Shown: one piece after another, positions 17,301 to 41,487 of the stretch | Numbering within the stretch: the stretch's first letter is position 1 | How the letters are laid out: every line of letters starts with the position of its first letter | From: Macrostomum hystrix | Lineage: Eukaryota; Animalia; Platyhelminthes | NCBI GenBank assembly: GCA_950097015.1 | Contig: CATNEN010000003.1 | Span: forward strand, 7,998,001-8,062,000 | Direction: 5' to 3' | Length of the DNA: 64,000 nt | Position numbers and translations under genes: made by a program | The notes under the pieces: model-generated | What the model saw: only the letters and a program-made list of their open reading frames with translations | What the model was told of the DNA's origin: nothing | The model's database searches: none

Positions 17301-17525
17301 AATGGAGTTTCACGGTATTATAGACTGAGATTTTATGGGATTCTAGAATGGGGTTTCATGAGATTATAGATTCAGGTTTCACGGGATTATAGAATGAGAT
17401 TTCACGGGACTCTAGGATCAGGTTTAATGGGATTCTACAATGAGATTTCATGGGATTATAGAATGAGAAGCAATAGAATTCTAGAATGAGGTTTCATGGG
17501 ATTATAGAATGAGGTTTCATGGAAC
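8315..17525 (+). repeat. ~9.2-kb satellite of two interleaved 23-bp monomers (~400 units)
   Basis: Monomer A is TAGACTGAGATTTTATGGGATTC; monomer B is TAGAATGG(G/A)GTTTCACGGTATTA. Degenerate intermediate monomers occur at both edges. Confidence 0.97.
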
Positions 17526-21097: not shown

Positions 21098-24000
21098 TCA
21101 AGCCGTCACCAGGTGGCCTTCCTCATCCAGGTGGCCAACAATTGGCAGGTAGAGAGTCTCCCAGCTGTCCGAGAGGCCGGGCACCGAGCCCACAACGGTG
21201 GCGTATTCCGTGTTGCCCAAGTTCTGCGGGTAAAAATGCAGGATGTGGCGCGAAGATGAGGAACATGATGCAGTTGCTGACGGAGAAGCTATTCGGTTGC
21301 AAAGTTTAAGAAGCCTGTGGATTCTTCATTGCATCATTCTTCAAGTGCAAAATGAAAGATTGCATTACATTCACTTTATAAACGCCTGTATTTTACTAGA
21401 CTTTGCAAAACATCATTTTTTCTTCGAGTTTCACAGAAGGGCGTTTACGAGCTCATAGTGACGATAAAAATATTACCTGGTACAGATAGTGCGACTTTCT
21501 AAACTCCAACTCGAGCTCCAGGGATGAACGGCGCTCTTCGTTTCTGGTTTTAGAGGCCGCAGCCGAGGTGGCCATCGATAGCTGAACCGAGTTTAGTCTG
21601 CGGCGATGCAGCCAAACAGGCACTGCGAGGATGAGCAGCAGCGGCAGCAGAATCAGCGGGGACAACAGAGGCCACATGGACCTCTGTGGCTCATGGTTAG
21701 GCGTGGCGATCAGCTGAGGCATTTCAGCTGAGGTTTTCATGAGAATGAATATGCTTCACTTTTCCATATGTTTCACCAAATCCATTAATAAATTGTTCGT
21801 AATGTAATGATGTTCATTTGTTATACCTATTTCTGCTTTTTCCTGATGTGAGGCTATCATGCGTAGTTCAAGATAAGCTGTGAATACTTGAGCCTTTGCT
21901 TGCTTCACATATAAAAGATGCTTAATGCTGCACCTAAGCTTGTAGCCTTCTACTGATTCGCAACTCCTCCCCATTCCTCACAATGTCCCATCGCATATAA
22001 TGTGCAGGCCCTCACCACTCACTGACAGGGCCATCGAGCCTAATGAAAATTAAGAACTTCAACAAAAGTCAAGCCCCCTATCTACTGATAATAGTTTGTG
22101 ACATCATGTCTGTCAAAGTTTATTGAATCATCCAACGCATGGTATCGTGCTTTGAGCAGAGCCTTAAAAACTTGCTCACTGGTGGAATTCAGCGTCCAAT
22201 TGTAGGTCTCCGAGAAATTCTGCCCACCTACTTGAGTCACAATGCAGGAGATTTCAATGAAAGGAATTTGCTCATGATGAACAAATGCTAATGCGTGAGT
22301 CGCATTGCCAAGCAGAACCGAACGGTTTGAGATTTCGCTTCTAAAGATCTGGAATCAAAATGGTTTCAGGCATCGAATCAACTACTGTACTCAAATAGCG
22401 AGATAGAGGAACAATTTTAGGCCTCATGAAACGTTCGCGTACTGATGATGAAGAATTGCCATTGACAAAGCACTCAGCCTCCGGCATGGGGTTTCCACCT
22501 GACAGACGCAGGGTGCCATCAAAGTGGGTTCCATTGAAGCTCGGCTCGGACAGCGTCACGTTTGGCTTGTCTAAAATCAGTTTTGAATTTGATTTCTTAG
22601 AGCAACTTCTTCAGCCACATGCGAGTTGGGTCGTTTTAAATCGCTTAAAACCATCAGCTTACAGTAAACAATGAGAGTCAAACTCCTCCAATCCGACAAA
22701 GCTTTGTCCTGCCTGAATATGCACCTGAGTATCTTCTCATGGTGCACTCTCGAGGCTTGAAGCCAGAAATTCTTCATCATTGTCGATTTCTCCGTCACAT
22801 TTCTGGTCTGTGTAGGAAAGCAGACGAATGAGCTAGTCACAAAAGAACCAGTTGATGAAGATAACAAGCAAGGTACGTACATGAAATTTACTCTTAGACA
22901 GTCTCAGATCTCCTAGAAAGCACTCGAGTTCGCTGACTGTTGGTCTGCCACCAGCTGACTCGAGCGTGACGTTCAGGATGTTGCCTTCAGCGATCTCGGA
23001 ACTTGGACTTATCAGCAGAGAATTGTTGGCCATGTCTGGAATCAGATGATCAGCACTCAGCTGTCTGGCATGCTTATAACAAAATTCAATCAGAAGCAGA
23101 GAGAACACAGTGAGTTTGGTCTCACAGTTCACTTGAAAGACCACTGCGGTGCTGCTGTTGAACACGGTCTGTGAGTTTAGAACTTGCTCAGCTGAGCACT
23201 GAATGGTGCTGCTCTGTCTATGCGGATGGAAACTCACTTCTGTTGTAACTCTATTTGACACGACTTTGCTTGATAGCTGACTCTGAAATATTGCCAGTTT
23301 TATGATAAAGAGAACAGTTTATGCTGTGTTCAAATAACTTTTTTCTTGAAAGAGTAAATGAAAATCAGCTCACAATCAGGCCGTGGTCAGCGCTGCATTT
23401 GTGAGTCACTTTCGGATTCCCGTCACCCGATGTGACGGAGAAGATTTTGGTAACGTTTTCGTAGATGTCGGATGTCTGCAAGCCGGTGATTTCTGGTTTG
23501 GGAGGCTGGTCTGAGGAGTCAGGATTCGATCATCAATTGATTTTAAAATGTAAAGGGCATCCAGTAGGTAAAAGTGTTTAAGATTCTTAACATTCTTTAA
23601 GGAGGTCCTCATGAACTCACAGAATACATTGACACTCTGATTGAAGTTGCTCAGCAGATCTGCCGCACTGCCCTGACTCACTCTGCACATCACAGAGACT
23701 CCGTTCATTTGTCTGCTGGACGTCGAGCTGAAGTTGGTGACGAGTTCCAGCTGTGGAATATCCTGAGTGCGCGGAGAAGTCGCATTTCTCGCATGCGTCA
23801 CATTCATGCGGATGTTTTGACTGCCAGCCACCTGCAGCCAGCACTCATGACTGGGTGCAGGATTCCCACCGACTGACGTCACAGAGACTGAGATGGCCTC
23901 GCCCTCTTTCACATCCAGGGGCTGAGTTGCCGACCATGAGTTATTTGATGCATCTGTGCATGAGTAACAGTTTTAGAATCAATTTCAGATTTGATTGTAG

Positions 24001-27000
24001 CAAAGCTTAATGCGACAAGACTGCCACTGCGAACTCACACAGCACATTTAGAGTCTCGCTTGTTGCCGAATTGTTGAACAAGACTTTGCCTTCAGCAGTC
24101 TGTACAACCTGGCAGGCGATGCTCTTCTTGTTGTCAGTGGCCAGGGCGCTGATGGTCCACACGGACGAGGCATTCGATTTTGAAGGATTCTGTTGAAGAG
24201 AAAAAGTTTCAGTAAACAACTAGCGACTCATTTCCTAAGACAACTTAAGAGCACTGAAGTTGTTAGGTGGTCTTAAGTTCTTAGGTGTTATTAAGTTGTC
24301 CTTGCTAATTTCCAGCACTTCATGTCCACCGGAACGCCTCTGCTGAACAACATTTCTATTTGCTCCATACCTTCCAGATTTATGAGATTCTTTTCAATAC
24401 CGAAACAGTGTACTCTACACAACTTGTCCACCCGCGACAAAAGGAGATCATGTCGGAAGGGATTCAAAATGCGCTATTTAACAGACATGTAGCAGAATAT
24501 ACGGACAGACCTATTATTCAGACCAAACAAAATTATTAAGTAATTTATTAAGTTGCTCATTGTTTCAGCCACCCTTAATTCAGAATTACCTTGAGCTGCG
24601 TGAGACTTCTACCACTGACTGAGCAGCTGGGCACAGCAGGTGGATTTCCTGGCTCGGAGATTTGCAAGGTGAAGTTCGCAGGAACTCCTGCTTGTAACTC
24701 CTTAGGCGGTAGTTTGATCAAAAAATTTTCTGCTGTGTCTGTGAAAGTAAGCATTGAATGAATTACGCTGGCAATGAAATCGAACATAATCGTAAAAGCA
24801 AAGATTTTGGTAATTCGATTCGGAGAAGAATTCGGAGAAGATTTTGGTAACGTTTTCGTAGATGTCGGATGTCTGCAAACCGGTGATTTCTGGTTTGGGA
24901 GGCTGGTCTGAGGAGTCAGGATTCGATCATCAAGTGATTTTAAAATGTAAAGGGCATCCAGTAGGTAAAAGTGTACATTCTTTAAGGAGGTCCTCATGAA
25001 CTCACAGAATACGTTGACACTCTGATTGAAGTTGCTCAGCAGATCTGCCGCACTGCCCTGACTCACTCTGCACATCACAGAGCCTCCGTTCATTCGTCTG
25101 CTGGACGTCGAGCTGAAGTTGGTGACGAGTTCCAGCTGTGGAATATCCTGAGTGCGCGGAGAAGTCGCATTTCTCGCATGCGTCACAGTCATGCGGATGT
25201 TTTGACTGCCAGCCACCTGCAGCCAGCACTCATGACTGGGTGCAGGATTCCCACCGACTGACGTCACAGAGACTGAGATGGCCTCGCCCTCTTTCACATC
25301 CAGGGGCTGAGTTGCCGACCATGAGTTATTTGATGCATCTGTGCATGAGTAACAGTTTTAGAATCAATTTCAGATTTGATTGTAGCAAAGCTTAATGCGA
25401 CAAGACTGCCACTGCGAACTCACACAGCACATTTAGAGTCTCGCTTGTTGCCGAATTGTTGAACAAGACTTTGCCTTCAGCAGTCTGTACAACCTGGCAG
25501 GCGATGCTCTTCTTGTTGTCAGTGGCCAGGGCGCTGATGGTCCACACGGACGAGGCATTCGATTTTGAAGGATTCTGTTGAAGAGTAAATGTTTCAGTAA
25601 ACAACTAGCGACTCATTTCCTAAGACAACTTAAGAGCACTGAAGTTGTTAAGTGGTCTTAAGTTCTTAGGTGTTCTTAAGTTGTCCTTGCTAATTTCCTG
25701 CACTTCATGTCCACCGGAATGCCTCTGCTGAGCATCATTTCTATTTGCTCCATACCTTCCAGATTTATGAGATTATTTTCAAAACCGAAACAGTGTACTC
25801 TACACAACTTGTCCACCCGCGAGAAAAGAAGATCATGTCGGAAGCGATTCAAAATGCGCTATTTAACAGACATGTAGCAGAATATACGGACAGACCTATT
25901 ATTCATACCAAAAATTATTATAAAGTAATTTATTAGGTTGCTCATTGTTTCAGCCACCCTTAATTCAGAATTACCTTGAGCTGCGTGAGACTTCTACCAC
26001 TGACTGAGCAGCTGGGCACAGCAGGTGGAATTCCTGGCTCGGAGATTTGCAAGGTGAAGTTCGCAGGAATTCCTGCTTGTAACTCCTTTGGCGGTAGTTT
26101 GATCAAAAAATGTTGTGCTGTGTCTGTGAAAGTAAGGATTGAATAAATTACGCTGGCAAGGAAATAAAACATAAAGTAAAAATAATATTCAGTTAATCGT
26201 AAAAACAAAAACATGTAAAATGAAATGAAGGAGAACTAAATAAGAAACGAATAGTCCTTTTTTACGAATTAAAACGAATAGATAAGCAAAGAGCTCACAC
26301 AGCACATCAGGCAGCGGATGACGGACCCAGGTCTCGAGGAGTCCTGACTGATTCACCAGGCACGCAATCGATGCTGAGCTGCCCCAGAGTCTGCTCACAT
26401 TCACCGAGAATGTGCTGCTCATGTTGCTGCTCTGAATAGAATATTTACGAAATCGATTCACTGAATTTATTATTTATCTACTGAAGGTAGATTAAGGATT
26501 TACAGCAAGGAAACTTGAGCGATGTGAATCGAAATCCTGATAGTCTTATAGTCTTAGAGTCAAACCGCTCAGTGCTGGAAAATTTACTCCACAATCAATT
26601 ATTCGGCAGTCATGGTGCCTCTTTTGTAAATCATAAAAGAAAACTTTGTTGCATTGTTAGTAGTGTATAATTAAAATTTATCAACTCAGTTGAAAACCAA
26701 ATTCTAGTATTATATTTCAACAATCCTTTCATTAGATTTTCCTGAAATTAGCAGCTTTTCAATTAGCTGGTTTTCAACCATGATGCTTCAGTCTGGTCTG
26801 TCATTACACAACATTGCTGTTTGGAGAAATTCAAGTTCAATTCGAGACTCACTGAAATCATTCGAAGCGATTCATTAGCGCTCCCGGACTGCAGCAAGCA
26901 GGCGTGACTGGTTGGCACCCAGTTGTCAGTCGATGAGTCAGCTGTCACATTTACGACTGCACCATCGATCCAGCTGATGCTCGGTGGCATTACGAATTTG

Positions 27001-29116
27001 CTCTGCGATGGCTCTGCAATGAATATATTAAATTGTTGCTTAATTTTACTGCAGGCACAAAAATTAAGCAATGCGCAATTTATTCATTAAAAAACACACT
27101 TAATATGCGAGGCAGCTTGGCTGTCTTCTGTTTAAAATCTTCAGATCCCGGCATCTGATATACGCATCGAACTTTGGCACCCACGTGAGCATTGGTCACA
27201 TTTATTCCGAAATTTGTGCTCAGGTTATACGTAGAGCTGGTGACGTCCTTGGCTTTCGTGCTCTGTGAATCGATGCATTGTGCTCATATTTCATTCACGT
27301 TAGACTACATCTGGCCACCGACTTTGAATTTCGTTGAGCTACTCACAGAGAGTGGCGCCATTTCCCCGTAGTCTGGAAGTTTGTCATTTGTATCATTAGT
27401 TTTATCAGCTGCACTGAGCAGGAAGCACCTGTGCACAGGCACAGGGAACGAGTCTTCAGTGCTGAATGTGAAAAATGCCGGCTTGCCGACGACCCAGAGC
27501 TTCGTGACACTCATATCCAGATTGTAAGCCTTGGGGCTCACTGAAAACAAATTCGGGATGGAGTGAAGTTAAGTGACCAATTTTAAGCTTCAATATACTA
27601 AAGAAGCTTTTTGTTCAAAATTAAAGCTAAAAAGTAGATGATGAGAAACAGATAATGTAGAGCTTCCGAGATGTCTCCAGCTGACTCCCATCGCTGCAGC
27701 TATGCTGGCACTGCAGCAGAGCTCCGTGCAATTCCGTACTCATGATGAACTCTTGGAGAATAATGAATTCCCTCATCGCAGATTTCTACAATGAACGGAG
27801 CACAAATTGATGGAAACCTTCAGTTCAATTGCTTCAAACTCGAAACTAAGAGGCAACATCTAACGCGTACAGTCTTTAGAGGTAAGACGGTCCCGTTCCC
27901 AATTTTTATGCTGCATGTTGATGAACTGGTCACATTGTGACAGGGCAGCCACGCCTTTATCATCAGCCCATCTTTTGGTTTGAGAAGCGACAGTTTTGTC
28001 TCAGAGCAGGTGTTCTGGGATGACATCAAGCAGAAGTCAGCGGCTGAAGTTTTATCAAGGGTCAGCAATCAATGCCATTGAGAATGTGACCAGTGCAATG
28101 AGAGCACTGAAACTCACTTTCAATGTTCAGAAGCCTGAAGTTCATGTACTTGTCAGTCTGGTTGCCCACGAATTTTCTCAGCAGCACAAACTAATGGAAA
28201 GTGAGGTTTGCAACGCGCGAACATGAAAATTCAAAACAGAAATATTGGTAGAAAGAAAGCTTACACACCATGGAATCCTTTACATCTGTGCAGTTCACTT
28301 TGTATACCCGACCCGGAACCTCTGAATAGCCGATGGAGCCGCACAGGTGAAATCCGGACACATCGGGAGTGATTCTCGATGTGCAAGCAGGTGGATTCTC
28401 AGTAAAAGATGTCGGCCTCTTGTTGCTGAGCAGAATCTCGATGCCTTGAGCTCTGATCCTCTCCTGTTCTGGAGCTGAAGTGAGTTCAACGCAGTTTTTA
28501 GGAAATCTTCTCAATTTATAGTTTCCTGGATGCACAAAAACTGGAGCTGCTCGGTAACTTACAGTCAGTTCGGCCATAGACAGTCACCGATTTTATTTGA
28601 ACAGGTCGGTTCAGCTTCAGCAGCAGCCACTGGTAGCCCGAGCTGTCCGGAGTGTCGCTGGAGTGAAAATAGTCAAACTGGCCTGGTCTGACCGATGAGT
28701 GTCGGAAGCAGCGACTGTCGCTCTCGAGCATGGACGACTGCCAGGCGTCGGCGACTTCGGCTTTGGTGACGTTGAAGCCGCTGCCTGCTAAACTATCATC
28801 CCTGCTCTCAGCTTCTGTGGTTAATGAACACGAGGATTCTCAAGTTATACTTTAGGATCATAAGTCCAGAAGATCATAAGATTCAACAGTGAAAAAAAGT
28901 TCTATGAATTCTTTTAGCCCACTCGTTGGCACTAAATTTTCACTTGAATTCCGTCAAATGGCAGATGAGTTTTTTTGCTCAATACGAGAGTCCCAGCTTA
29001 TCGAGATTCAACAGCATGAGTATTGAGTGCGAATAATATTGCGAAGAATACTTACTGCAGTAAACACAGCTGAAGATGCAGCTAGATAATAGCAGAAGAT
29101 GCAGTCGGAAGATCAT
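21098..29116 (-). CDS. Receptor A: signal peptide + F-type-lectin-like domain + 10 Ig-like domains + TM + ITIM/ITSM-like tail (~1361 aa, 24 exons)
   Basis: Phase-consistent GT-AG exons: 29056-29116, 28563-28814, 28269-28474, 28118-28190, 27871-28043, 27650-27785, 27347-27540, 27100-27262, 26853-27013, 26299-26431, 25975-26123, 25424-25574, 25006-25338, 24590-24738, 24039-24189, 23621-23953, 23374-23510, 23126-23282, 22881-23035, 22663-22807, 22443-22570, 22180-22348, 21477-21727, 21098-21223 (4086 nt, no internal stop seen). SP MIFRLHLLLLSSCIFSCVYC; TM WPLLSPLILLPLLLILAVPVWL then HRRR; tail ...SHYLYQNLGNTEYATVVGSVPGLSDSWETLYLPIVGHLDEEGHLVTA*. Confidence 0.85.
23436..26190 (-). repeat. Intragenic tandem duplication (1385-bp period) of the three exons encoding two Ig domains of gene A
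   Basis: Exon boundaries repeat with an exact 1385 offset (26123/24738, 25574/24189, 25338/23953). Junction at ~24800-24850. Confidence 0.93.
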
Positions 29117-31631
29117 TCGGACTGGCAGGTAAAAAGTGAGTTGCAGCTGCAAGTGATCGACTGATTGCTGTCTCTGCTCAGTAGTGTACTTTTCCTCTGA
29201 AAAACAAGCCGCAGGTTTGCAAATTACTGAACCTGTGGAATCGAAGGATTTGTGAAAAATGCAGAAACTCTCAAGAACTAAGTCGACAGCAGCTCCAGAC
29301 TGCACTCAGTTCCCTTTGCTCACATTTAGAGATGCGGACCAGAGCTTTACAGATTTCCGTGAGCTCTTCGTTTATTTCTTCGAAAACAAAAGTGATGTTA
29401 AATTTTAACAAATCCTGGTCAGAAATTCAAGTGCTCTGGCTTGCTTGAGATTGGAAAGATGTAGATATTTGAGAAGCCGCTCAGATTCCACAGTGTCAAG
29501 CTGTTTTATTGCTGCAGAAGTTAGTAAAGCAGTGTCAGGTCCACCGCGTGATTGGTCGCGAAAATGGACTTTCAGTTGCTAGTGATTATAATTGATAAAC
29601 GCCATAAACACAGTAGCCCCGAACTTTGAAAAGGTAAAATGAGCGGCGAAATTTTTATAAGCACAGAAACTGAGAGTGTGAAATGCATTCAATTGCAGAA
29701 AGTCTGTAATTTCACAAAACTTTTCAAATCGTTTAAAAAGCTATTTACAGGGCCAGTACATGGACTAGAAATGGAGTCCAGCATTTTAGATAGATGTTAT
29801 CTAGAAATAATCAACGTGCCATTCTGCTTTCTAACTGAAGGCTAAATTTCTGTTTTGCAGACTGCATAAAAGATGCAAGCCCACGAGATTGTAATTGACA
29901 CGGATTCCTGACGACACGATTGACCAAATTATCTTATGACGATGAGCAGCGCGATTTCGTTATAGCTTGACGGTTTCGGGCTTAGAAAATTTGTGTTAAA
30001 TGTTTCTAATAGAACAGTAGAAAACCGGGAATTGAGAAGTACGAGTACTCGTAAAAGTAGTACTCGTAAAAATGACGGTCGTCTCACTGAATAGTTAAGT
30101 GTATAAAATAGCATTAGACGTAATACTTATTGTGTGTCAATAATACGCATTTTCATAAATTTATTGAAAATCTTGATGCTAGACATGATTTAATAAATAT
30201 TAATTTGTATCTTTCTTTATAGCTGGATGAAAATGCATTCAGATTTAGTGCTTCTTTCTTCAACTTGTTTAGTTCATTCGGTAACGGTAATGTTTTCCTT
30301 AACTTTGTTGTTTGCACTTCGTCTTTGTATTAAAAGACTGAAAGACTAGGCCCTAGGCTGCTGGGCTAGATAATCAGCGAGGCCATATCGCGATTTCATT
30401 GGCCGTGGCTCCAGCCCAGGGGGAGAGTTGACAGGGTGGTTGGCATCCCCCCGGGGTAGTATTGTGAAATTAATCGAGGCGAAAAACACGGTGGTTCGTA
30501 TGCTTCGATTCTGCTTTGATTGTTTTCCGTGTGGAAAAAGAAAAGTATTGAATAATTGTGTGCCAGGGTGCTGTATATTCTATTGAATATTCGTGTTAAT
30601 AGAACATTCCGGAATCCGGAAAGTTTGAGAAGTACTTTCTAGAAAGGGTGCGCGGGAGTTCGAAATACCGAATATAGTAAGTGAGTGTCTACGCGGAAGT
30701 CTCTAGAATACAAGTATTGTATCGTAGGCTATCTTATGCCATGCACGCACGTTGTTTAGTTGGAGAACTGTCTCGAAAATGAAGATTTAAACATGTCATA
30801 GAATATCACAGAAAACAGAAATACGCCAGGACACTTATATAATACTCGTACGATGAATACGCTGCAATAGCTTTTCTTCTTTCATATGAGACTGTCATAA
30901 ATTATGAAATTATGAAATTATCTGAACTTAGGAAATAGAAATCAATAACAGGAACAAGCCCAGAAATTTGATCTCAGATCTGCCTTCATTAACTTTCATA
31001 TTGCCCGCTCAAAGAGGCAGTGATATTAAGCTAATACAAAATATTGCAAAGGCTAAAAATACTATTAAGTATAATTCTAGTCCTGTCATGCATAAAGTAG
31101 CTCTACTTCACAAACACAAGCATTTTTGCACGACATGCTGCAGTGCGAATTACTTCTAGAGTAATGAGAAATCAAGGCTGAAACTAAAGGTGCAAAAGTA
31201 TCAGTGGCTCAAGATTTACAATTAGGAGTCCTAATGAATCAGTAGTGTAGCAGAACTTTGCTAGATTATAAATGTGGCTTTGTGACAGCTGCATCACGCA
31301 ATTATAACTGCAAAGCCTATCAGCAGTTCCCATTGATTTCGTATGGATATTGGCCGAATTTTAATCTGAAACATCCTTATTAAAGACGCTTTAAATGTGG
31401 CTACTAGTTGTTGATTAGCTCAACTACAGGCCAACATAACTCTCACTTGTTTCAAATAGTTATAATGCACAGTCTTAATGAGTAAACTCAGATATCAATG
31501 GAAGTCAGCAAAGTGTTCTTAGTGGACAACGACAAAGCCAGAAGAATGTTCAGAAGAAATTCATTAACTGTCATTCGGTCGAAACCCACAGGCCATACGC
31601 CACTGACAGAATCAGGCTATTCATTCTTTCT

Positions 31632-34600
31632 TCACTCTTCATAGTAGTAGACAGTCTGCAATAAAAAAGAGTTCGGTCATAAATAATTACAAAAAATGTT
31701 TTTTTAATTGCAATGACTACTTATAGTAGTTGACTAACATTCGGATCGGCGGGATTCGAAACTTCAGCAGGTCGTCTCGCTAGCATCTCAACAGCCTCAC
31801 ATTGGCTGGTGGCGGCCGGTCGCTTCCGCCTCAGCACAATGGCGGCCACCGAGGCTCCGACTGCAGCAGCTGCGACCAGCGAGCAGCTGAGTGTCACGAT
31901 TGGCAACGCTGCGCCACTGCTGACTGCCGGTGTCTGTCTGGAACTCGCTGAAGCAAAATATGCCAGAGTGAAGTTCAGTCAGAGCTCAGGTAATTGTCTA
32001 CAAAGACCTAAATTCTTTGTCCATCTACTGCTATTCAGTCATCAGCGGCTCACGGAAGACGGCCCGAAAGGTGGTTGAGCTCCTTGCGGGGCTGAACAGA
32101 GTTCCGAGACCAGGCCAGCTCTGGTTTATCAGACACGTGACCGTGACCTCCGCCTGCGGCTCCATGAACCAATGGGACAGCCGAGCACTACGAATCCAGC
32201 CTCCGCTTCTGCCTCTGGTGTCGGGCTCCGGAGTCAGCTGCTCAGAGGATAGAAGTGCGACGAGAGTTTCTTTCGAGACAATGGTGTGAGTTATGCCTCT
32301 AACTCAAAGACTCAAATGACTCAAGTGAAAAGATCCCTCACTGTCAGGCCTTCAATGCTGACTGAGTCGGACCTCAGAGAGCAGCGCAGCTCCGGCTTCG
32401 GGTTTCCCTCCAGCGTCCTCCCAATGAGACTGAGCTCAGAGCCGTTCAGCAGCTGGCCGGACCAGCCGATGCTGTTTGAGGCGACTGCGGGACGGTTTGA
32501 GGGATGAGCAGTCAAGACTCTCAAGTGTCGTTCTGTAATTAGGGCTCTGAATATCCTCTGAAGTTCTATGCAAGAAACTCCACATTCATGTTACCTATCT
32601 CATTAAATGTAACAAGGACTCACAGAAAACCTGAACACTTTGTTGAAAGCGCTTCGGAAATTCCTTCACAGCTGTCTGATAGACAACGCACATCAGGGAG
32701 CCGTTGTTCATTCGCCTTGCTGATGGCACGCTGAAGTTGGTCTCCAGCTCCCTGTCCAAGTTCTTGCGCAGAGTTTCAGCTGTCAAGTTGATCACGAGAC
32801 TATCTGCTGATATCACCCAGCACCAGTGGCCAGTGGGCTCAGGGTTGCCACCGACTGACCTCACTGAGACAGCCAAAGGCTCGCCTTCCCTCACGAGCAG
32901 CGGCTGATTGGCACTCCACGAGCAGTTTGACAGATCTTTTTTGGGGAACAAAAAATGGATAAGACTGCACCTTGTCCTTTTAGTTTAGGTTTGGATGCGC
33001 TCATTTGAGATGAACTTACGCAGCACATTCAGCGCCTCGCTGATTACAGATAAATAAAAAACTGTTGCATCTTTTCCAGTGGACTGTATCACATGGCAGT
33101 TGATGCTCATTCCGTCGTCGCCAGCGATGGCATCGAGTATCCACGTCGATGAGGCATCGAGGGCAGTTGGAGGCTGAAGTTTGAGTTGTTTTGGCATCAC
33201 TAAATAGAATTGCACTGAATGCTGCATTTGCTGCAGACTCACTTTGATTTGTGATAAAGTTCTTCCCGCAACGGAGCAGATGTGCTGAGCAGGCGGATTC
33301 CCAATGTCCGATGCAGCGAGCTCAAACTGAACTGCCGATCCACTTTGGATTGGTCCATCGGGCAATCGGATCGATGCGTTGCGAACCGGGACTGCAATTC
33401 AAGAGTCTGGGCTGAAAACTGAAGGGCTTTTGACAGTGTCAGTATGCTTGATTCACTTGAAGATGGAAGGTGAGAACCTAATTGACTTTCAATAGTGTTC
33501 GTGGGTGCATGAAAGTTTTAGCGAAAAATTGAATTTGGTCTAATTTCTAACACATCAACTCGCCATGAAGGTAGAATATGTGTGGACGAGGTAATTTTCG
33601 CTGGGCTGGCATTGTAGCATCATGTGAGTTATAATATTTTATTTAAACTCTTGAGCTTTTCTAATGCATTTCGTGCTAGATTTACCGCTTTGGGTGTCAG
33701 CGGTCCTTCTCAGTTTACTGATTTTCATGACTCGACCAATTCTTAATAAACATGGTCAATTCGGAATGGAATTTCTATTTTTATTAGTCAAATTGTCGCT
33801 TGTAAACTGCAAATTGTTGGAAACCATCTATAAATATCTGATAAAGTAACAGGTGTGGAAATGAACCATCGCCTTTATGCTCATAGCAGCAAGCCAGCAA
33901 AATCCACGGCAAGTTAATTACAAAAGCAGATCCTACTGCATTCTATTTTTGTCGTGTCAATCGAACAACGTCTATTATTGTTTGATATGCCGATCTGAAG
34001 CGGATGTAGTTTTGCTTGGCAGAAATGGCTCGCATTTACCAAAGTGCAGCAATTTCTAGATTCAGTGAATGCCGAGATCAAATTTGCAGTCAAATGCTAA
34101 AGTTGGCCCTTGAAGCCTGAGAATAAGTGGTGTACGTACTCAACTCTAAATGATGAAGCGATTCCAAAACAACGAAAGAAAAGCTATTATTGGCGCAAGC
34201 TTTCAAACAGACTCTAAAGACCTTGTTCCGTCTTCTCAGTTGATGCTTTGTGACGCTCTGCTTTCATAATTTCAGAAATAACATCGACTAAATGGAAAGT
34301 ATTTTCATAAAGCTGCTTGCAACCCAACCTTCAATTTTCTATAATTCTAGCAAAAATACATCAGCCAGCGTTTTGCAAGACATGGAGAACTTCAGGACAA
34401 AAGTGCTTAAATCGCTTAAAACCATCAGCTTACAGTAAACAATGAGAGTCAAATTCCTCCATTCCGTCAGAACTTTGTCCTGCTCGAATTTGCACCTGAG
34501 TATCTTCTCATGGTGCACCCTCGAGGCTTGAAGCCAGAAATTCTTCATCATTATCGATTTCTCCGTCACATTTCTGGTCTGTAGGAAAGCAGACGAATGA

Positions 34601-37600
34601 GCTAGTCACAAAAAAACCAGTTGATGAAGATAACAAGCAAGGTACGTACATGAAATTTACTCTCAGACAGACTCAGATCTCCTACAAAGCACTCGAGTTC
34701 GCTGACTGTTGGTCTGCCACCAGCTGACTCGAGCGTGACGTTCAGGATGTTGCCTTCAGCGATCTCGAAACTTGGACTTATCAGCAGAGAATTGTTGGCC
34801 ATGTCTGGAATCAGATGATCAGCACTCAGCTGTCTGGCATGCTTATAACAAAGTTCAATCAGAAGCAGAGAGAACACAGTGAGTTTGGTCTCACAGTTCA
34901 CTTGAAAGACCACTGCGGTGCTGCTGTTGAACACGGTCTGTGAGTTTAGAACTTGCTCAGCTGAGCACTGAATGGTGCTGCTCTGTCTATGCGGATGGAA
35001 ACTCACTTCTGTTGTAACTCTATTTGACACGACTTTGCTTGATAGCTGACTCTGAAATATTGCCAGTTTTATGATAAAGAGAACAGTTTATGCTGTGTTC
35101 AAATAACTTTTTTCTTGAAAGTGTAAATGAAAATCAGCTCACAATCAGGCCGCGGTCAGCGCTGCATTTGTGAGTCACTTTCGGATTCCCGTCACCCGAT
35201 GTGACGGAGAAGTTTTTGGTAACGTTTTCGTAGATGTCGGATGTCTGCAAGCCGGTGATTTCTGTTTTGGGAGGCTGGTCTGAGGAGTCGGTTTGATAGT
35301 CAAGTGATTTTAAAATGTAAAGGGCATCCAGTAGGTAAAAGTGTACATTATTTAAGGAGATCCTCATGAACTCACAGAATACGTTGACACTCTGATTGAA
35401 GTTGCTCAGCAGATCTGCCGCACTGCCCTGACTCACTCTGCACATCACAGAGCCTCCGTTCATTCGTCTGCTGGATGTCGAGCTGAAGTTGGTGACGAGT
35501 TCCAGCTGTGGAATATCCTGAGTGCGCGGAGAAGTCGCATTTCTCGCATGCGTCACATTCATGCGGATGTTTTGACTGCCAGCCACCTGCAGCCAGCACT
35601 CATGACTGGGTGCAGGATTCCCACCGACTGACGTCACAGAGACTGAGATGGCCTCGCCCTCTTTCACATCCAGGGGCTGAGTTGCCGACCATGAGTTATT
35701 TGATGCATCTGTGCATGAGTAACAGTTTTAGAATCAATTTCAGATTTGATTGTAGCAAAGCTTAATGCGACAAGACTGCCACTGCGAACTCACACAGCAC
35801 ATTTAGAGTCTCGCTTGTTGCCGAATTGTTGAACAAGACTTTGCCTTCAGCAGTCTGTACAACCTGGCAGGCGATGCTCTTCTTGTTGTCAGTGGCCAGG
35901 GCGCTGATGGTCCACACGGACGAGGCATTCGATTTTGAAGGATTCTGTTGAAGAGTAAAAGTTTCAGTAAACAACTAGCGACTCATTTCCTAAGAAAAGT
36001 TAAGAGCACTGAAGTTGTTAAGTGGTCTTAAGTTCTTAGGTGTTCTTAAGTTGTCCTTGCTAATTTCCAGCACTTCATGTCCACCGGAATGCCTCTGCTG
36101 AACATCATTTCTATTTGCTCCATACCTTCCAGATTTATGAGATTATTTTCAAAACCGAAACAGTGTACTCTACACAACTTGTCCACCCGCGAGAAAAGAA
36201 GATCATGTCGGAAGGGATTCAAAATACGCTATTTAACAGACATGTAGCAGAATATACGGACAGACCTATTATTCAGACCAAACAATATTATTAAGCAATT
36301 TATTAAGTTGGTCATTGTTTCAGCCACCCTTAATTCAGAATTACCTTGAGCTGCGTGAGACTTCTACCACTGACTGAGCAGCTGGGCACAGCAGGTGGAT
36401 TTCCTGGCTCGGAGATTTGCAAGGTGAAGTTCGCAGGAACTCCTGCTTGTAACTCCTTTGGCGGTAGTTTGATCAAAAAATGTTGTGCTGTGTCTGTGAA
36501 AGTAAGCATTGATTAAATTACGCTGGCAAGGAAATTAAACATAAATTAAATATAATATTTAGTTAATCGTAAAAACAAAACATGTAAAATGAAATGAACA
36601 AGAACTAAATAAGAAACGAATAGTCGTTAGTTAAGAATTAAAACGAATAGATAAGCAAATAACTCACACAGCACATCAGGCAGCGGATGACGGACCCAGG
36701 TCTCGAGGAGTCCTGACTGATTCACCAGGCACGCAATCGATGCTGAGCTGCCCCAGAGTCTGCTCACAATCACCGAGAATGTGCTGCTCATGTTGCTGCT
36801 CTGAATAGAATATTTACGAAATCGATTCACTGAATTTATTATTTATCTAAATGAAGGTAGATTAAGGATTTACAGCAAGGAAACGTGAGCGATGTGAATC
36901 GAAATCCAGAGACTCTTATAGTCTTAGAGTCAAACCGCTCACTGCTTGAAAATTTACTCCACAATCAAATATTCGGCAGTCATGGTGCCTCTTTTGTAAA
37001 TCATAAAAGAAAACTTTGTTGCATTGTTAGCAGTGTATAATTAAAATTTATCAACTCAGTAGAAAACCGAATTCTAGTATTATATTTCAACAATCCTTTC
37101 ATTAGATTTTCTTGAAATTTGCAGCTTTTCAATTAGCTGGTTTTCAACCATGATGCTTCAGTCTGGTCTGTCATTACACAACATTGCTGTTTGGAGAAAT
37201 TCAAGTTCAATTCGAGACTCACTGAAATCATTCGAAGCGATTTATTAGCGCTCCCGGACTGCAGCAAGCAGGCGTGACTGGTTGGCACCCAGTAGTCAGT
37301 CGATGAGTCAGCTGTCACATTTACGACTGCACCATCGATCCAGCTGATGCTCGGTGGCATTACGAATTTGCTCTGCGATGGCTCTGCAACGAATATATTA
37401 AACTGTTGCTTAATTTTACTGCAGGCACAAAAAATTACGCAATGCGCAATTTATTCATTAAAAAAACACACTTAATATGCGAGGCAGCTTGGCTGTCTTC
37501 TGTTTAAAATGTTCAGATCCCGGCATCTGATATCCGCATCGAACTTTGGCACCCACGTGAGCATTGGTCACATTTATTCCGAAATTTGTGCTCGTGTCAT

Positions 37601-39568
37601 ATGTAGAGCTGGTGACGTCCTTGGCTTTCGTGCTCTGTGAATCGATGCATTGTGCTCATATTTCATTCACGTTAGACTACATCTGGCCACCGACTTTGAA
37701 TTTCGTTGAGCTACTCACAGAGAGTGGCGCCATTTCCCCGTAGTCTGGAAGTTTGTCATTTGTATCATTAGTTTTATCAGCTGCACTGAGCAGGAAGCAC
37801 CTGTGCACAGGCAGAGGGAACGAGTCTTCAGTGCTGAATGTGAAAAATGCCGGCTTGCCGACGACCCAGAGCTTCGTGACACTCATATCCAGACTGAAAT
37901 CTATGGGGTTCACTGAAAACAAATTCGGGATGGAGTGAAGTTAAATGACCAATTTTAAGCTTCAATACACTAAAGAAGCTTTTTGTTCAAAATTAAAGCT
38001 AAAAAAGTAGATGATGAGAAACCGGAAATGTAGAGCTTCCGAGATGTCTCCAGCTGACTCCCATCGCTGCAATTATGCTGGCACTGCAGCAGAGCTCCGT
38101 GCAATTCCGTACTCATGATGAACTCTTGGAGAATAATGAATTCCCTCATCGCAGATTTCTACAATGAACGGAGCACAAAATGATGGAAACCTTCAGTTCA
38201 ATTGTTGCGAACCCGAAACTAAGAGGCAAAATCTAACGCGTACAGTCTTTAGAGGTAAGACGGTCCCGTTCCCAATTTTCATGCTGCATGTTGATGGACG
38301 GGTCACATTGTGACAGGGCAGCCACGCCTTTATCATCAGCCCATCTTTTGGTTTGAGAAGCGACAGTTTTGTCTCAGAGCAGGTGTTCTGGGATGACAAG
38401 CAGAAGCCAGCGTCTGAAGTTTTATCAAGGGTCAGCAATCAATGCCATTGATTATGTGACCAGTGCAATGAACAGAGCACTGAAACTCACTTTCAATGTT
38501 CAGAAGCCTGAAGTTCATGTACTTGTCAGTCTGGTTGCCCACGAATTTTCTCAGCAGCACAAACTAATGGAAAGTGAGGTTTGCAACGCTCGAACATGAA
38601 AATTCAAAACAGAAATATTGGTAGAAAGAAAGCTTACACACCATGGAATGCTTTACATCTGTGCAGTTCACTTTGTATACCCGACCCGGAACCTCTGAAT
38701 AGCCGATGGAGCCGCACAGGTGAAATCCGGACACATCGGGAGTGATTCTCGATGTGCAAGCAGGTGGATTAGATGTAAAAGATGTCGGCCTCTTGTTGCT
38801 GAGCAGAATCTCGATGCCTTGAGCTCTGATCCTCTCCTGTTCTGGAGCTGAAGTGAGTTCAACGCAGTTTTTAGGAAATCTTCTCAAATGACAGTTTCCC
38901 GGATGCACAAAAACGGGAGCTGCTCGGTAGCTTACAGTCAGTTCGGCCATAGACAGTCACCGATTTTATTTGAACAGGTCGGTTCAGCTTCAGCAGCAGC
39001 CACTGGTAGCCCGAGCTGTCCGGAGTGTCGCTGGAGTGAAAATAGTCAAACTGGCCAGGTCTGACCGATGAGTGTCGGAAGCAGCGACTGTCGCTCTCGA
39101 GACTGGACGACTGCCAGGCGTCGGCGACTTCGGCTTTGGTGACGTTGAAGCCGCTGCCTGCTAAACTATCATCCCTGCTCTCAGCTGAAACTGCCAGGGC
39201 GGATTAAACTAGCTACTACGCTCATAGATGCGATTGGAGCGTACAGAATGTTCTTTTGTCCAACTCTTTTCCTATACAACTGCTATTGCTACCAGTTGGT
39301 CTGTAAATGTAAAGTAGACAACTAATATACATAAAATATTACTTACTATGTTTTTGGCATATAAATTTTAATATTGTTCGGGACCTATCTGGGTAGCGAA
39401 CGGCTAGTTACGTGCAGCACAAAACGTATGTACAATGAAACACATTGCTTTCTCCTAGGTGTTGCATTCCACATAAAAAATAAAGTTTCAACTGAAACAA
39501 CACTTACAGCGACGGATGGCTCCGACAGTGCAGATGAGGCACATCAGCAGCTGGAAACAGATATTCAT
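31632..39568 (-). CDS. Receptor B: signal peptide + F-type-lectin-like domain + 10 Ig-like domains + TM + short Tyr-ended tail (~1315 aa, 24 exons)
   Basis: Exons: 39508-39568, 38936-39184, 38642-38847, 38491-38563, 38244-38413, 38023-38158, 37719-37912, 37472-37634, 37223-37383, 36668-36800, 36345-36493, 35794-35944, 35376-35708, 35143-35279, 34895-35051, 34650-34804, 34434-34578, 33243-33391, 33020-33173, 32624-32935 (weak AAG acceptor), 32342-32484, 32054-32237, 31739-31947, 31632-31655 (3948 nt). SP MNICFQLLMCLICTVGAIRR; TM LPIVTLSCSLVAAAAVGASVAAIVL then RRKR; tail ends PADPNTVYYYEE*. Confidence 0.83.
34407..39186 (-). repeat. Block near-identical to 22636-28813 (exons 2-17 plus introns shared by genes A and B)
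   Basis: Direct comparison shows only scattered substitutions in exons and introns. Similarity stops at the exon-2 acceptor and ~27 bp into the intron after the LTLIVY exon. Confidence 0.95.
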
Positions 39569-41349: not shown

Positions 41350-41487
41350 TTACGTCACGCTGAAGCTGGTCTTCCGCTTCGATTCCTGCCTTTCAGTCTT
41401 CCTCAGTGTCTCTGTAGCCACAGTGATCACGTGACCCTCAGCTCTCTTCAGCCAGCCTTGATGATTGGGCTCCGAGTTGTCACCGAT
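41350..41487 (-). pseudogene. Orphan degenerate Ig-exon relic of the receptor family
   Basis: IGDNSEPNHQGWLKRAEGHVITVATETLRKTERQESKRKTSFSVT* aligns by eye with gene B VGGNPEPTGHWCWVISADSLVINLTAETLRKNLDRELETNFSV. Confidence 0.7.

What the first reader, a model, noticed from the sequence alone, without database searches (positions are those of the whole stretch)
21098..39568. Candidate new paired-receptor system: Siglec-like architecture built on an F-type lectin head (lectin + 10 Ig + TM + divergent Tyr-signalling tails)
Seen: two intact 24-exon genes that the ORF track only fragments. They have nearly the same ectodomain but unrelated TMs and tails: A carries YQNL, TEYATV and TLYLPI; B has a short tail ending NTVYYYEE. 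Established: vertebrate Siglecs are glycan-binding head + Ig stalk + ITIM/ITSM, and paired receptors such as SIGLEC5/14 share ligand-binding regions but signal differently. Hydractinia Alr genes are a clustered Ig receptor family in an invertebrate. Inference: this is an independently evolved invertebrate glycan-sensing inhibitory/alternative receptor pair for immunity, self-recognition or adhesion. I do not recognise this domain combination.
Basis: partly seen in the sequence, partly recalled or inferred. Interest (0 to 1): 0.93.

Follow-up and report, generated by a model that had tools for sequence, protein, structure and literature searches.

The report
Flatworm lectin-headed Ig receptor pair
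Two neighbouring genes of a Macrostomum-type flatworm encode long surface receptors with nearly the same fucose-lectin-like head and antibody-like stalk but two different, conserved tyrosine-motif tails, a design like vertebrate paired immune receptors; their ligand and role are untested.

Summary
Two 24-exon genes lie on the minus strand: A (29116-21098, about 1361 codons) and B (39568-31632, about 1315 codons). All 23 introns in each are GT-AG. Spliced public transcript contigs join A's ectodomain, membrane and tail exons without mismatch. B's splicing was not checked with RNA.

Each protein has a signal peptide, a head with the galactose-binding jelly-roll fold (nearest solved structure: eel fucolectin), ten Ig-like modules, a membrane span and a tail. 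A and B are 97% identical in DNA, introns included, from exon 2 to A exon 20 / B exon 17. Exon 1, the membrane-proximal modules, the membrane span and the tail are unrelated.

A's tail carries YQNL, TEYATV and TLYLPI. B ends in NTVYYYEE. Both tail classes recur in diverged paralogues and in Macrostomum lignano proteins. A second pair on contig C7 repeats the pattern: shared ectodomain, A-like or B-like tail.

These are not an isolated pair. They belong to a family of at least 43 genes, found only in Macrostomum and in no paper I could find. This scan has already noted the family on other pieces of this genome.

B is not a classical activating partner: it has no charged membrane residue and no ITAM. 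Glycan binding, signalling and biological role are inferred only.

The parts
29056..29116 (-). Gene A exon 1: start codon and signal peptide (20 codons plus 1 base)
   Evidence: ATG at 29116 and a GTAAGT donor after 29056. The N-terminus is hydrophobic. It is unrelated to B exon 1.
28118..28814 (-). Gene A head domain, exons 2-4 (28814-28563, 28474-28269, 28190-28118): F-type-lectin-like galactose-binding jelly roll
   Evidence: Pfam F5_F8_type_C is only weak (E 0.008). The head is colinear with M. lignano proteins. The model of homologue P0002 matches eel fucolectin 1k12 at Z 10.3. A profile search of PDB sequences hits only FBP32, at E 0.045. ESM Atlas neighbours are all from the F5/8-C / fucolectin clan.
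27650..28043 (-). Gene A Ig-like module 1 (exons 5 and 6: 28043-27871, 27785-27650)
   Evidence: Canonical splice sites and phases 1-0-1. The module profile does not match significantly. It is assigned by size, exon phase and Cys pattern only. The exon 6 donor is weak.
27100..27540 (-). Gene A Ig-like module 2 (exons 7 and 8)
   Evidence: The exon halves hit module-profile positions 23-46 (E 0.013) and 58-96 (E 2e-5).
26299..27013 (-). Gene A Ig-like module 3 (exons 9 and 10)
   Evidence: Profile hits at positions 17-44 (E 0.038) and 62-93 (E 1.4e-4). The exon end at 26299 is confirmed by an RNA joint.
25424..26123 (-). Gene A Ig-like module 4 (exons 11 and 12)
   Evidence: RNA joints 26123|26299 and 25338|25424. 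The second half hits the profile (E 0.013); the first half does not hit in register.
25006..25338 (-). Gene A Ig-like module 5 (single exon 13)
   Evidence: 97% identical to the module that was folded. RNA joints are seen on both sides.
24039..24738 (-). Gene A Ig-like module 6 (exons 14 and 15), part of the A-specific 1.4-kb tandem duplication
   Evidence: Self-blast: 23436-24797 matches 24833-26181 at 96.4%. RNA joints 24738|25006 and 24189|24590.
23621..23953 (-). Gene A Ig-like module 7 (single exon 16): the module that was folded
   Evidence: AlphaFold2 gives pLDDT 79 and seven strands. Foldseek finds IL-18Rbeta, SYG-1 and Rst at about E 1e-4. VIA-align gives SYG-2 D2 Z 10.7, SYG-1 9.8 and Rst 9.2.
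23126..23510 (-). Gene A Ig-like module 8 (exons 17 and 18)
   Evidence: RNA joints. The first half hits the profile at E 1.2e-5.
22663..23035 (-). Gene A Ig-like module 9 (exons 19 and 20): the last module shared with B
   Evidence: RNA joints. Profile hits at E 5.5e-5 and 0.006. A/B similarity ends at 22636, 27 nt into the next intron.
22180..22570 (-). Gene A Ig-like module 10 (exons 21 and 22), part of the class-A 3' cassette
   Evidence: RNA joints. Profile hits at E 0.001 and 0.022. Related exons occur only beside A-type tails: C7 g4 and g5.
21477..21727 (-). Gene A transmembrane exon 23 (TM followed by HRRRL; ends ...HYLYQ)
   Evidence: RNA joints 21727|22180 and 21223|21477 in all four runs. 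Copies lie at C7:538049 and C7:587806.
21098..21223 (-). Gene A last coding exon: completes YQNL and carries TEYATV, TLYLPI and the stop
   Evidence: RNA-verified junction. The exon is 98% conserved in two C7 copies and 66-68% in g5, which reads MEYATV and TVYEVI.
39508..39568 (-). Gene B exon 1: start codon and signal peptide
   Evidence: ATG at 39568 and a GTAAGT donor. A 70% identical copy lies upstream of C7 g3.
38491..39184 (-). Gene B head domain, exons 2-4 (39184-38936, 38847-38642, 38563-38491)
   Evidence: 97-100% aa identity to A's head exons. All splice sites are canonical.
34434..38413 (-). Gene B Ig-like modules 1-7 (exons 5-17), shared with A
   Evidence: Exons: 38413-38244, 38158-38023, 37912-37719, 37634-37472, 37383-37223, 36800-36668, 36493-36345, 35944-35794, 35708-35376, 35279-35143, 35051-34895, 34804-34650, 34578-34434. 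DNA identity to A is 97%. One X2 contig carries B's base at A 22748 / B 34519.
32054..33391 (-). Gene B Ig-like modules 8-10 (exons 18-22), the class-B 3' cassette
   Evidence: Exons: 33391-33243, 33173-33020, 32935-32624, 32484-32342, 32237-32054. Exon 20 hits the module profile at E 6e-47 and exon 21 at 4e-5. Related exons sit beside B-type tails in C7 g2 and g3. Not RNA-checked.
31739..31947 (-). Gene B transmembrane exon 23 (uncharged TM, then RRKRP ... ADPN)
   Evidence: A 99% copy lies at 46757-46963. Copies at 40-47% identity lie at 44090-44281, C7:549683 and C7:572587.
31632..31655 (-). Gene B last mini-exon, TVYYYEE plus stop
   Evidence: A phase-0 donor and acceptor. The mini-exon is conserved as TVYYYEE*, TVYYDA* and TVYYEA* in four paralogues. 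M. lignano P0018 carries PTVYYYEE.
24813..24905 (-). Skipped pseudo-exon (a relic of exon 17) at the junction of A's tandem duplication
   Evidence: tblastn gives 81% identity to exon 17 over 31 aa. The RNA joint 24738|25006 skips it.
46415..48033 (-). Fragment E: a copy of B's last five exons and 3' UTR, without a 5' half
   Evidence: Self-blast: 31394-33011 matches 46415-48033 at 98.3%. Exon hits. Mini-exon at 46674-46651.
43999..44730 (-). Fragment D: diverged class-B 3' exons (module 10, TM, TVYYDA mini-exon)
   Evidence: tblastn gives 41-67% identity to B21-B23. Mini-exon at 44019-43999.
6490..7602 (-). Copy C: head exons of another family member, with head exon 2 split between two frames
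   Evidence: tblastn gives two overlapping pieces for exon 2 (7383-7508 and 7492-7602) in different frames. It is probably a pseudogene.

Best explanation
A and B are neighbouring members of a large, Macrostomum-restricted family of type-I membrane glycoproteins.

Shown:
- Each gene has 24 exons and encodes a signal peptide, an N-terminal jelly-roll domain of the galactose-binding / F-type-lectin clan, ten Ig-like C2-type modules, one membrane span and a cytoplasmic tail. In the modules a Cys takes the place of the usual C-strand Trp and the B-strand Cys is missing.
- The head and seven modules are kept 97% identical between A and B, introns included.
- The 3' cassettes belong to two old, separately conserved classes. 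Class A has two T/x-x-Y-x-x-V/I (ITSM/ITIM-type) motifs, plus YQNL in this subgroup. Class B has a short tail ending in N-T-V-Y-Y-(Y)-D/E-A/E.
- The same combination of one ectodomain with either tail class recurs at a second locus.
- Gene A is transcribed and spliced as modelled.
- The genome encodes a tandem-SH2 tyrosine phosphatase of the SHP type.

Inferred:
- The head, held about ten Ig modules away from the membrane, binds an extracellular ligand, most plausibly a glycan.
- Recombination or gene conversion keeps the two genes seeing the same ligand.
- Phosphorylated class-A tails recruit SH2 proteins such as the SHP-type phosphatase (and Grb2 through YQNL), while class-B tails give a different output through their C-terminal YY-acidic motif.
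- This would be a paired-receptor logic that arose independently of vertebrate Siglecs, KIRs and LILRs. The biological setting (immunity, self/non-self, mating or adhesion) is open.
For: Gene models and RNA:
- All introns are GT-AG.
- Spliced contigs from four runs join A's tail, TM and ectodomain exons with no mismatch.

Head:
- The AlphaFold model of the 57%-identical homologue P0002 matches eel fucolectin 1k12 at Z 10.3, rmsd 2.3 over 115 residues, and FBP32 at Z 9.3. Foldseek gives FBP32 at E 4e-4.
- The family profile finds only FBP32 among 177,635 PDB sequences, with both Arg of the fucose motif aligned.
- All the best ESM Atlas neighbours are of the F5/8-C / fucolectin clan.
- WQSS, FFHS, G-Y/F-H/Q-W and SVTV-x-x-R are conserved in 41 paralogues.

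Ig modules:
- The model has pLDDT 79 and matches SYG-2, SYG-1 and Rst at Z 9-10.7.
- Exon halves match the module profile in register.
- Pfam C2-set_2 sits at threshold in M. lignano homologues.

Pairing:
- A/B blocks are 97% identical.
- C7 g2 and g5 are 96.6-97.4% identical over 6.6 kb, then switch to B-like and A-like cassettes.

Tail conservation:
- Class A: and P0004 with VVYAQV and TEYTEI.
- Class B: the mini-exon in four paralogues and PTVYYYEE in P0018.

Signalling partner: a 549-codon open frame with two SH2 domains and a PTP domain.

Family size and range: at least 43 head exons in the genome. Only M. lignano hits in 1.84 billion representatives.
Against: - No ligand, phosphorylation, partner or expression site was tested.
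- The head misses the defined F-type motif spacing and the calcium motif, scores below Pfam thresholds, and its fold match ties within 1 Z with CBM32, CBM62 and discoidin domains.
- The head model is of a M. lignano homologue with moderate confidence (head blocks pLDDT 50-86). The window's own head could not be folded because it is split over three exons.
- B has no RNA support here beyond one B-type base in one contig. A search with its TM exon found nothing.
- B has no charged TM residue and no ITAM, so an activating role is not indicated.
- The 97% identity could be a recent unequal crossover rather than maintained homogenisation.
- A/B differences are mostly non-synonymous (45 against 8). 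That fits relaxed constraint as well as diversifying selection, and the counts are small.
- Modules 1 and 4 and some exon halves are not significantly matched by the module profile.
- The locus holds several truncated or frameshifted copies.
Confidence: 0.6

Rival explanations
1. The proteins are cell-adhesion molecules of the IgCAM type. The head and distal Ig modules would mediate protein-protein (homophilic or heterophilic) contacts in tissue organisation. The tail tyrosines would serve endocytosis or cytoskeletal adaptors rather than immunoreceptor-type signalling, and no glycan would be sensed.
For: The best structural matches of the Ig module are adhesion receptors: SYG-2/nephrin, SYG-1/Kirrel, Rst and nectin-like proteins. 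Nectin-4 is the only Ig hit of the profile in PDB sequences. The head lacks the exact fucose and calcium motifs. Discoidin-type domains also bind proteins and lipids (my own knowledge).
Against: Tissue-patterning adhesion molecules are usually conserved single-copy genes. This family has at least 43 copies in clusters with pseudogenes, is confined to one genus, and has a length-variable head loop. Two ITSM-consensus motifs are conserved between species.
Confidence: 0.15
2. The family acts in reproduction (sperm-egg, sperm-female tract or mate recognition) in these hermaphroditic, sexually conflicted flatworms. Rapid duplication and divergence would be driven by sexual selection, not immunity.
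For: The family is genus-restricted and fast-turning-over, with clustered copies. Non-synonymous changes between A and B are in excess in the Ig part (dN/dS about 2, small counts). F-type lectins include fertilisation proteins (review PMC12221842).
Against: No expression data by tissue were available. The tail motifs are those of signalling receptors rather than gamete-coat proteins.
Confidence: 0.12
3. The 'pairing' has no function. B is a recent chimera made by unequal crossing-over in an unstable cluster, and it may be silent or on its way to becoming a pseudogene like its neighbours.
For: Truncated and frameshifted copies lie all around: C, D, E, C7 g1 and g4. B's splicing and expression were not shown. 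The breakpoints lie in introns, as an exchange would give. Substitutions between A and B look nearly neutral.
Against: B keeps an intact frame of 1315 codons over 24 exons with all splice sites canonical. The same arrangement recurs with a different ectodomain type on C7. The class-B C-terminal motif is conserved at 40% TM identity and in M. lignano, so class-B genes as such are under constraint.
Confidence: 0.12
4. A and B are two alleles, or a collapsed and expanded repeat, placed wrongly in tandem by the assembler.
For: The 97% identity over 4.8-6.2 kb resembles allelic divergence in a heterozygous animal.
Against: The two copies have unrelated exon 1, 3' modules, TM and tails, and different module content, inside one contig. 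A's private tandem unit and unique tail are in mRNA at 100% identity. A parallel pair exists on another contig.
Confidence: 0.01

Closest known systems
Vertebrate Siglecs, including the SIGLEC5/SIGLEC14 pair and CD22
   Same: A type-I membrane protein with a glycan-binding-type domain at the tip, a stalk of C2-type Ig domains, and a tail with ITIM/ITSM-type tyrosines. Neighbouring genes share near-identical ligand-binding parts but differ in tail. The comparison with Siglecs rests on my own knowledge; the features of A and B come.
   Different: The head is a jelly-roll of the F5/8-C / F-type clan, not a V-set Ig with the sialic-acid arginine. There is no sequence relationship. B lacks the charged TM residue by which Siglec-14 couples to DAP12. 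There are ten modules. The family is confined to Macrostomum.
F-type lectins (eel agglutinin AAA 1k12, striped-bass FBP32 3cqo) and mosaic forms such as Drosophila furrowed
   Same: AAA is the best structural match and FBP32 the only sequence match in the PDB. The QSS, His, Trp and Arg...Arg landmarks are shared. Membrane-anchored mosaic F-type proteins are known (PMC5712786).
   Different: The motif is H-X30-R-T-D-X5-R instead of H-X24-R-X-D-X4-(R/K). There is no h2DGx calcium motif and no CC pair. Scores are below Pfam thresholds. The reviews list CTLD, pentraxin, CCP, FA58C and TM as partner domains, not Ig.
ITSM/ITIM receptors such as PD-1 and the SLAM family
   Same: A's TEYATV and TLYLPI, and M. 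lignano's VVYAQV and TEYTEI, fit T/V-x-Y-x-x-V/I. The tandem arrangement is conserved. An SHP-type phosphatase is encoded in the genome.
   Different: This is only a match to a short consensus, and binding is untested. The ectodomains are unrelated. SAP-type adaptors were not looked for.
Nephrin/SYG-2 and Kirrel/SYG-1/Rst adhesion receptors
   Same: They are the best structural matches of the folded Ig module (Z 9.2-10.7). The G-G-x-P-x-P signature is the same.
   Different: No sequence search connects the families. Those proteins have no lectin-like head and keep the canonical B-F disulfide and C-strand Trp, whereas here a Cys sits at the Trp position. This is not orthology.
Lectin-plus-IgSF defence molecules of other lophotrochozoans (snail FREPs, CREPs and GREPs) and clustered invertebrate Ig receptors (Hydractinia Alr)
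   Same: They combine Ig-superfamily and lectin-type domains in expanded, lineage-specific, clustered families (my own knowledge, not tested here).
   Different: The snail molecules are secreted, with Ig at the N-terminus and a different lectin type at the C-terminus. Alr proteins have no lectin head. Nothing found here suggests homology.

Membership tests
F-type lectin domain (FTLD) | Beta-barrel jelly-roll 'F-type' fold | tested here: inconclusive
   The model of homologue P0002 gives 1k12 as the top match at Z 10.3 and 3cqo at Z 9.3. CBM62, CBM32 and muskelin discoidin domains tie within 1 Z. The galactose-binding-like fold is met; the F-type subtype is not resolved. The window's own head is split over three exons and was not folded.
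F-type lectin domain (FTLD) | Fucose motif H-X24-R-X-D-X4-(R/K) (PMC5712786) | tested here: not met
   A and B read H-X30-R-T-D-X5-R across the exon 2/3 junction. Both Arg align with FBP32's, but the His is offset by three positions. The Asp is not kept in M. lignano homologues. This is a variant, not the defined motif.
F-type lectin domain (FTLD) | Calcium motif h2DGx | tested here: not met
   There is no DG in the stretch between WQSS and FHSS in A, B or the 41 paralogues.
F-type lectin domain (FTLD) | Match to the curated domain model above threshold | tested here: not met
   F5_F8_type_C and F5_F8_type_C_2 score only E 0.008-0.019, at 15.5-17 bits against cut-offs of about 28.
F-type lectin domain (FTLD) | Binds L-fucose | not testable with these tools
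   This needs recombinant protein and a glycan array.
Siglec family | N-terminal V-set Ig domain with the sialic-acid-binding arginine | tested here: not met
   The head is a jelly-roll of the F5/8-C clan, not an Ig domain.
Siglec family | C2-set Ig stalk, a single TM span and an ITIM plus ITIM-like/ITSM tail | tested here: met
   The Ig fold of the module is shown. The TM exon and motifs are on verified mRNA for A. This is a resemblance of design only.
Paired receptors (functional class) | Neighbouring genes with near-identical ligand-binding ectodomains | tested here: met
   97% DNA identity from exon 2 to A exon 20 / B exon 17. A second such pair lies on C7.
Paired receptors (functional class) | One member with ITIM/ITSM motifs in a long tail | tested here: met
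   A carries TEYATV and TLYLPI, conserved in g1, g4 and g5 and echoed in M. lignano P0004. This is a motif match only.
Paired receptors (functional class) | A partner with a short tail and a charged TM residue that couples to an ITAM adaptor | tested here: not met
   B's TM span has no charged residue. Its 38-residue tail has no YxxL/I-x6-8-YxxL/I. Instead it has a conserved C-terminal TVYY(Y)-acidic motif.
Paired receptors (functional class) | Opposite signalling outputs on the same ligand | not testable with these tools
   This needs biochemistry and cell assays.
Immunoglobulin superfamily, C2-type domain | Seven-strand Ig beta-sandwich | tested here: met
   The single-exon module has pLDDT 79 and every top match is an Ig domain. 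Most split modules match its profile in register. Modules 1 and 4 are assigned by pattern only.
Immunoglobulin superfamily, C2-type domain | Canonical B-strand/F-strand disulfide and C-strand Trp | tested here: not met
   There is no B-strand Cys. An invariant Cys sits at the usual Trp position, six residues after the first Pro of G-G-x-P-x-P, and the F-strand Cys is also invariant. Whether they form a disulfide was not measured.
Nephrin / sidestep / hemicentin orthologues | Detectable sequence orthology and the same domain order | tested here: not met
   HMMER against 1.84 billion representatives and two word-based searches return only uncharacterised M. lignano proteins.

The most novel reading that the evidence does not exclude
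Flatworms of the genus Macrostomum independently evolved a true paired-receptor system. Lectin-headed Ig receptors would have their ligand-binding cassettes kept matched by recurrent gene conversion at several loci, while two ancient tail classes deliver opposing signals: ITSM/ITIM-type tails docking an SHP-type phosphatase, against a C-terminal pY-Y-E-E-type tail docking another SH2 or PTB protein. That would be a convergent counterpart of Siglec-5/14, KIR or LILR logic in a lophotrochozoan.
Probability: 0.3. Interest if true: 0.85.

Novelty: new variant of a known kind. Interest (0 to 1): 0.66.

Why it matters
Receptor pairs that see the same ligand but signal differently are a hallmark of vertebrate innate immune regulation. 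They are thought to arise in arms races with pathogens. Outside deuterostomes almost nothing comparable is documented.

Here the whole design is built from different parts, in an animal that can be cultured, knocked down by RNAi and made transgenic (M. lignano has counterparts of both tail classes). The design comprises:
- a lectin-type head;
- an Ig stalk;
- ITSM/ITIM-type tails;
- an alternative tail class;
- matched ectodomains at two loci.

If the inferred logic holds, it would be a clean case of convergent evolution of immunoreceptor architecture. It would also offer a tractable entry into flatworm non-self, symbiont or mate recognition. Even if the role proves to be adhesion or reproduction, the family is undescribed, large and fast-evolving, with an unusual Ig variant in which Cys takes the place of the core Trp.

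Tried and rejected
- Pfam on raw open segments of the window gave no Ig hit and only a weak F5/8-C hit.
- phmmer of head exon 2 against PDB sequences gave only a chance hit.
- The search for homologous proteins with B's TM exon found nothing. Its length window admits only 38-121 aa proteins, so this says little.
- The search for homologous proteins with P0004 found only P0004 itself, because the search is limited by shared words.
- An automatic search for phase-1/phase-1 exons missed the split modules, because their internal introns are phase 0. Models were then built by hand and from the RNA joints.
- My first coordinates for A exon 3 and for B's TM exon were out of frame and were corrected.
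Variant bases in those contigs mostly match neither B nor A's duplicate, so they come from other paralogues. Only 22748 T>C is B-specific.
- The loose ends at 21530 and 26429 are paralogue transcripts (C7 g1/g4-like), not alternative splicing of A.
- Paper searches for Macrostomum with F-type lectin, lectin plus immunoglobulin, or ITIM found nothing on this family.
- I did not build, search or fold the joined 1361- and 1315-residue proteins. Every search used single exons by reference or database homologues. For the same reason the window's own head, which spans three exons, was not folded.
- An assembly or allele chimera was considered and rejected (see rivals).

Full report
**Setting.** The window is C3:7998001-8062000 of a 220-Mb, 42-contig eukaryote assembly. 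The nearest database proteins are all from Macrostomum lignano at 44-62% identity, so the organism is a Macrostomum-type flatworm. All searches and folds used single exons by reference, or database homologues.

**Gene models.** Open segments on the minus strand and hand inspection of splice sites give two 24-exon genes.
- A runs from the ATG at 29116 to the stop at 21098, 4086 coding nt.
- B runs from the ATG at 39568 to the stop at 31632, 3948 nt.
- All 23 introns in each gene have GT..AG ends.
- Introns between domains are phase 1. Introns that split a module are phase 0.

**RNA evidence.** The look-up of sequencing runs returned four runs of one study that hold about 40% of the words of the 8.4-kb query, roughly its exon share. 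Laying their contigs on 21001-27000 gave 15 joints, all with CT..AC ends on the + strand (GT..AG on the gene strand).
- One 1643-nt contig with no mismatch runs from the 3' UTR through the last exon, the TM exon 21477-21727 and six of the seven ectodomain exons up to 23510.
- Exon 22443-22570 and the joints on to 26299 come from other contigs.
- So A's tail is joined to its ectodomain on mRNA, and the YQNL motif made by the 21477|21223 junction is real.
- The joint 24738|25006 shows that A's private duplicated unit is expressed, and that a relic exon at 24813-24905 is skipped.

B was not covered. The only trace of it is one contig with B's base at A 22748. A's exons 1-9 and all of B therefore rest on canonical sites, A/B conservation and colinearity with M. 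lignano proteins. The donor of exon 6 (GTTTCT, same place in A and B) is weak.

**The head.**
- Pfam gives only sub-threshold F5/8-C hits.
- HMMER of exon 2 against 1.84 billion representatives finds ten proteins. The seven real relatives are all M. lignano 'uncharacterised' or 'Ig-like domain-containing' proteins.
- I folded the homologue P0002 with a 12-row alignment. The head region has pLDDT 50-86 and the rest is poor.
- VIA-align against 48,161 chains puts eel fucolectin first (Z 10.3, rmsd 2.3 Å, 115 residues) and FBP32 fourth. CBM62, CBM32 and discoidin domains lie within 1 Z. Foldseek agrees.
- The family profile, searched against all PDB sequences, hits only FBP32 (E 0.045, both tandem domains) and nectin-4 (E 0.95).
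- The best ESM Atlas neighbours are all of the F5/8-C / fucolectin clan.

The published fucose motif is H-X24-R-X-D-X4-(R/K), and the calcium motif is h2DGx (PMC5712786). A and B read H-X30-R-T-D-X5-R and have no DG. The head is therefore a variant member of the galactose-binding-like clan with F-type as its nearest kin. It is not a proven fucose lectin.

Across 41 paralogous head exons, WQSS, CF, FFHS, G-Y/F-H/Q-W and SVTV-x-x-R are kept. The loop between CF and FFHS varies greatly in length, and one cluster has lost the His.

**The stalk.**
- The single-exon module 23622-23951 folds with pLDDT 79 into seven strands.
- All top matches are Ig domains, led by SYG-2 D2 (Z 10.7), SYG-1 and Rst.
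- Invariant residues include G-x-P, a Cys-Trp pair and the F-strand Cys. There is no B-strand Cys. Counting from the G-G-x-P-x-P signature, the Cys occupies the usual Trp position.
- A profile of this module matches first-half exons at positions 3-46 and second-half exons at 58-99, mostly at E 1e-5 to 0.04. Modules 1 and 4 and a few halves are not significant.
- The ectodomain exons hold 41 (A) and 34 (B) N-x-S/T sequons.

**The pairing.**
- A 28813-24833 matches B 39186-35205, and A 24789-22636 matches B 36544-34407, both at 97% with introns included.
- The shared tract starts at the exon 2 acceptor and ends 27 nt after A exon 20 / B exon 17.
- Outside it, exon 1, the remaining modules, the TM span and the tail are unrelated.
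- A gained two modules by a 1.4-kb tandem duplication (96.4%). B has three class-B modules instead. The equal count of ten is therefore a coincidence.
- In the shared exons there are 45 non-synonymous and 8 synonymous differences: dN 0.022, dS 0.013; Ig part dN/dS about 2.1, head 0.65. The counts are too small for a firm claim.

**Tails.**
- A's tail follows the TM span and HRRRL, and holds YQNL, TEYATV and TLYLPI.
- The last exon is 98% conserved in two C7 genes.
- In the diverged g5 (TM exon 38% identical) it reads MEYATV ... TVYEVI.
- M. lignano P0004 ends with VVYAQV ... TEYTEI.
- B has an uncharged TM span and a 38-residue tail ending ADPN|TVYYYEE.
- The phase-0 donor, the acceptor and the mini-exon are kept as TVYYYEE, TVYYDA or TVYYEA in four paralogues whose TM exons are only about 40% identical.
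- M. lignano P0018 has PTVYYYEE after its TM span.

Both tail classes are thus old and constrained. The genome encodes an SHP-type phosphatase: one 549-codon open frame with two SH2 domains and a PTP domain. A second candidate lies on C11.

**A second pair.** On C7 (loci L031-L038) five family genes lie in a row.
- g2 and g5 are 96.6-97.4% identical over 6.6 kb, from upstream of exon 1 to just past a single-exon module.
- After that, g2 continues with class-B-like exons and TVYYEA, and g5 with class-A-like exons and the two Tyr motifs.
- g3 shares its 5' 4.1 kb with g2 and g5, and its 3' end with g2.
- The C7 ectodomain type is only 37-84% identical to the A/B type at the protein level.

So 5' halves group by locus and 3' halves group by tail class. 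That is the signature of recombination or gene conversion between neighbours. Whether it is maintained by selection is not shown.

**Family context.**
- Head exon 2 has at least 43 matches in clusters on seven contigs.
- The window also holds a frameshifted head (copy C, 6490-7602), two 3' fragments (D and E) and a stray module piece at 41296-41502.
- Profile and single-sequence searches find the family only in M. lignano.
- Four paper searches found no description of it. The F-type lectin reviews list no Ig partner domain.
- This scan had already noted the same family many times on other pieces of this genome. Those are unchecked AI notes that agree with what I tested, and I do not count them as support.

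**Verdict.** The architecture, the shared cassette with two tail classes, and the lack of a described orthologue all hold. 'Paired' gains support from the second locus and from cross-species conservation of both tails. Three points do not hold or remain open:
- B is not a classical activating partner.
- The head is a variant that fails the defined fucose motif.
- Ligand, signalling and role are inference.

I rate it a new variant of a known kind (lectin-headed Ig-superfamily signalling receptors) and of real interest to comparative immunology, pending biochemistry.

Noticed in passing
window 8443-17519: A 9-kb satellite of 23/46/69-nt units (about 197 copies of the 46-mer, 80-85% matches) with strong GC skew (+0.5). 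It lies between copy C and gene A. A second, 99%-regular 43-nt array starts at 18165.
   Followed up: partly
window 2158-4233 (-): A remnant of an LTR-type retroelement pol gene, with RT RNase H and integrase core domains spread over several frames. It lies just downstream of the frameshifted family copy C.
   Followed up: partly
window 56173-61133 (-): Exons of an SLC4-type bicarbonate transporter gene (Pfam HCO3_cotransp, E 1e-18 to 1e-19 on three exons). It is an ordinary neighbouring gene.
   Followed up: partly
window 60910-62369: A long, regular coding-like tandem repeat that stays open in several frames (for example KQLHPHN units), inside or beside the transporter gene. It is probably an intronic minisatellite.
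   Followed up: no
window 49618-52140, both strands: Two diverged copies of a Cys-rich segment (shared ...AFTMADGPCQL.VFDKCSKSVRDCSCSRRGQVFVK...) on opposite strands. They have no Pfam match and may be another lineage-specific secreted gene pair.
   Followed up: partly
window 42181-42425 and 43348-43592: A 245-bp direct repeat, 100% identical, 1.2 kb apart, between gene B and fragment D.
   Followed up: no
L036 (C7:583370-588432): Family gene g4, the closest full-length relative of A (exon peptides 74-98% identical). It shows frame breaks in head exon 3 and in the TM exon, so it is a likely pseudogene or an assembly indel. Even so, contigs matching g1/g4-type TM exons are present in the RNA runs.
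   Followed up: partly
G000:C11:6341046-6347651: A second locus with two SH2 hits about 5 kb upstream of PTP-domain hits on the same strand. It may be a second SHP-type phosphatase gene.
   Followed up: no
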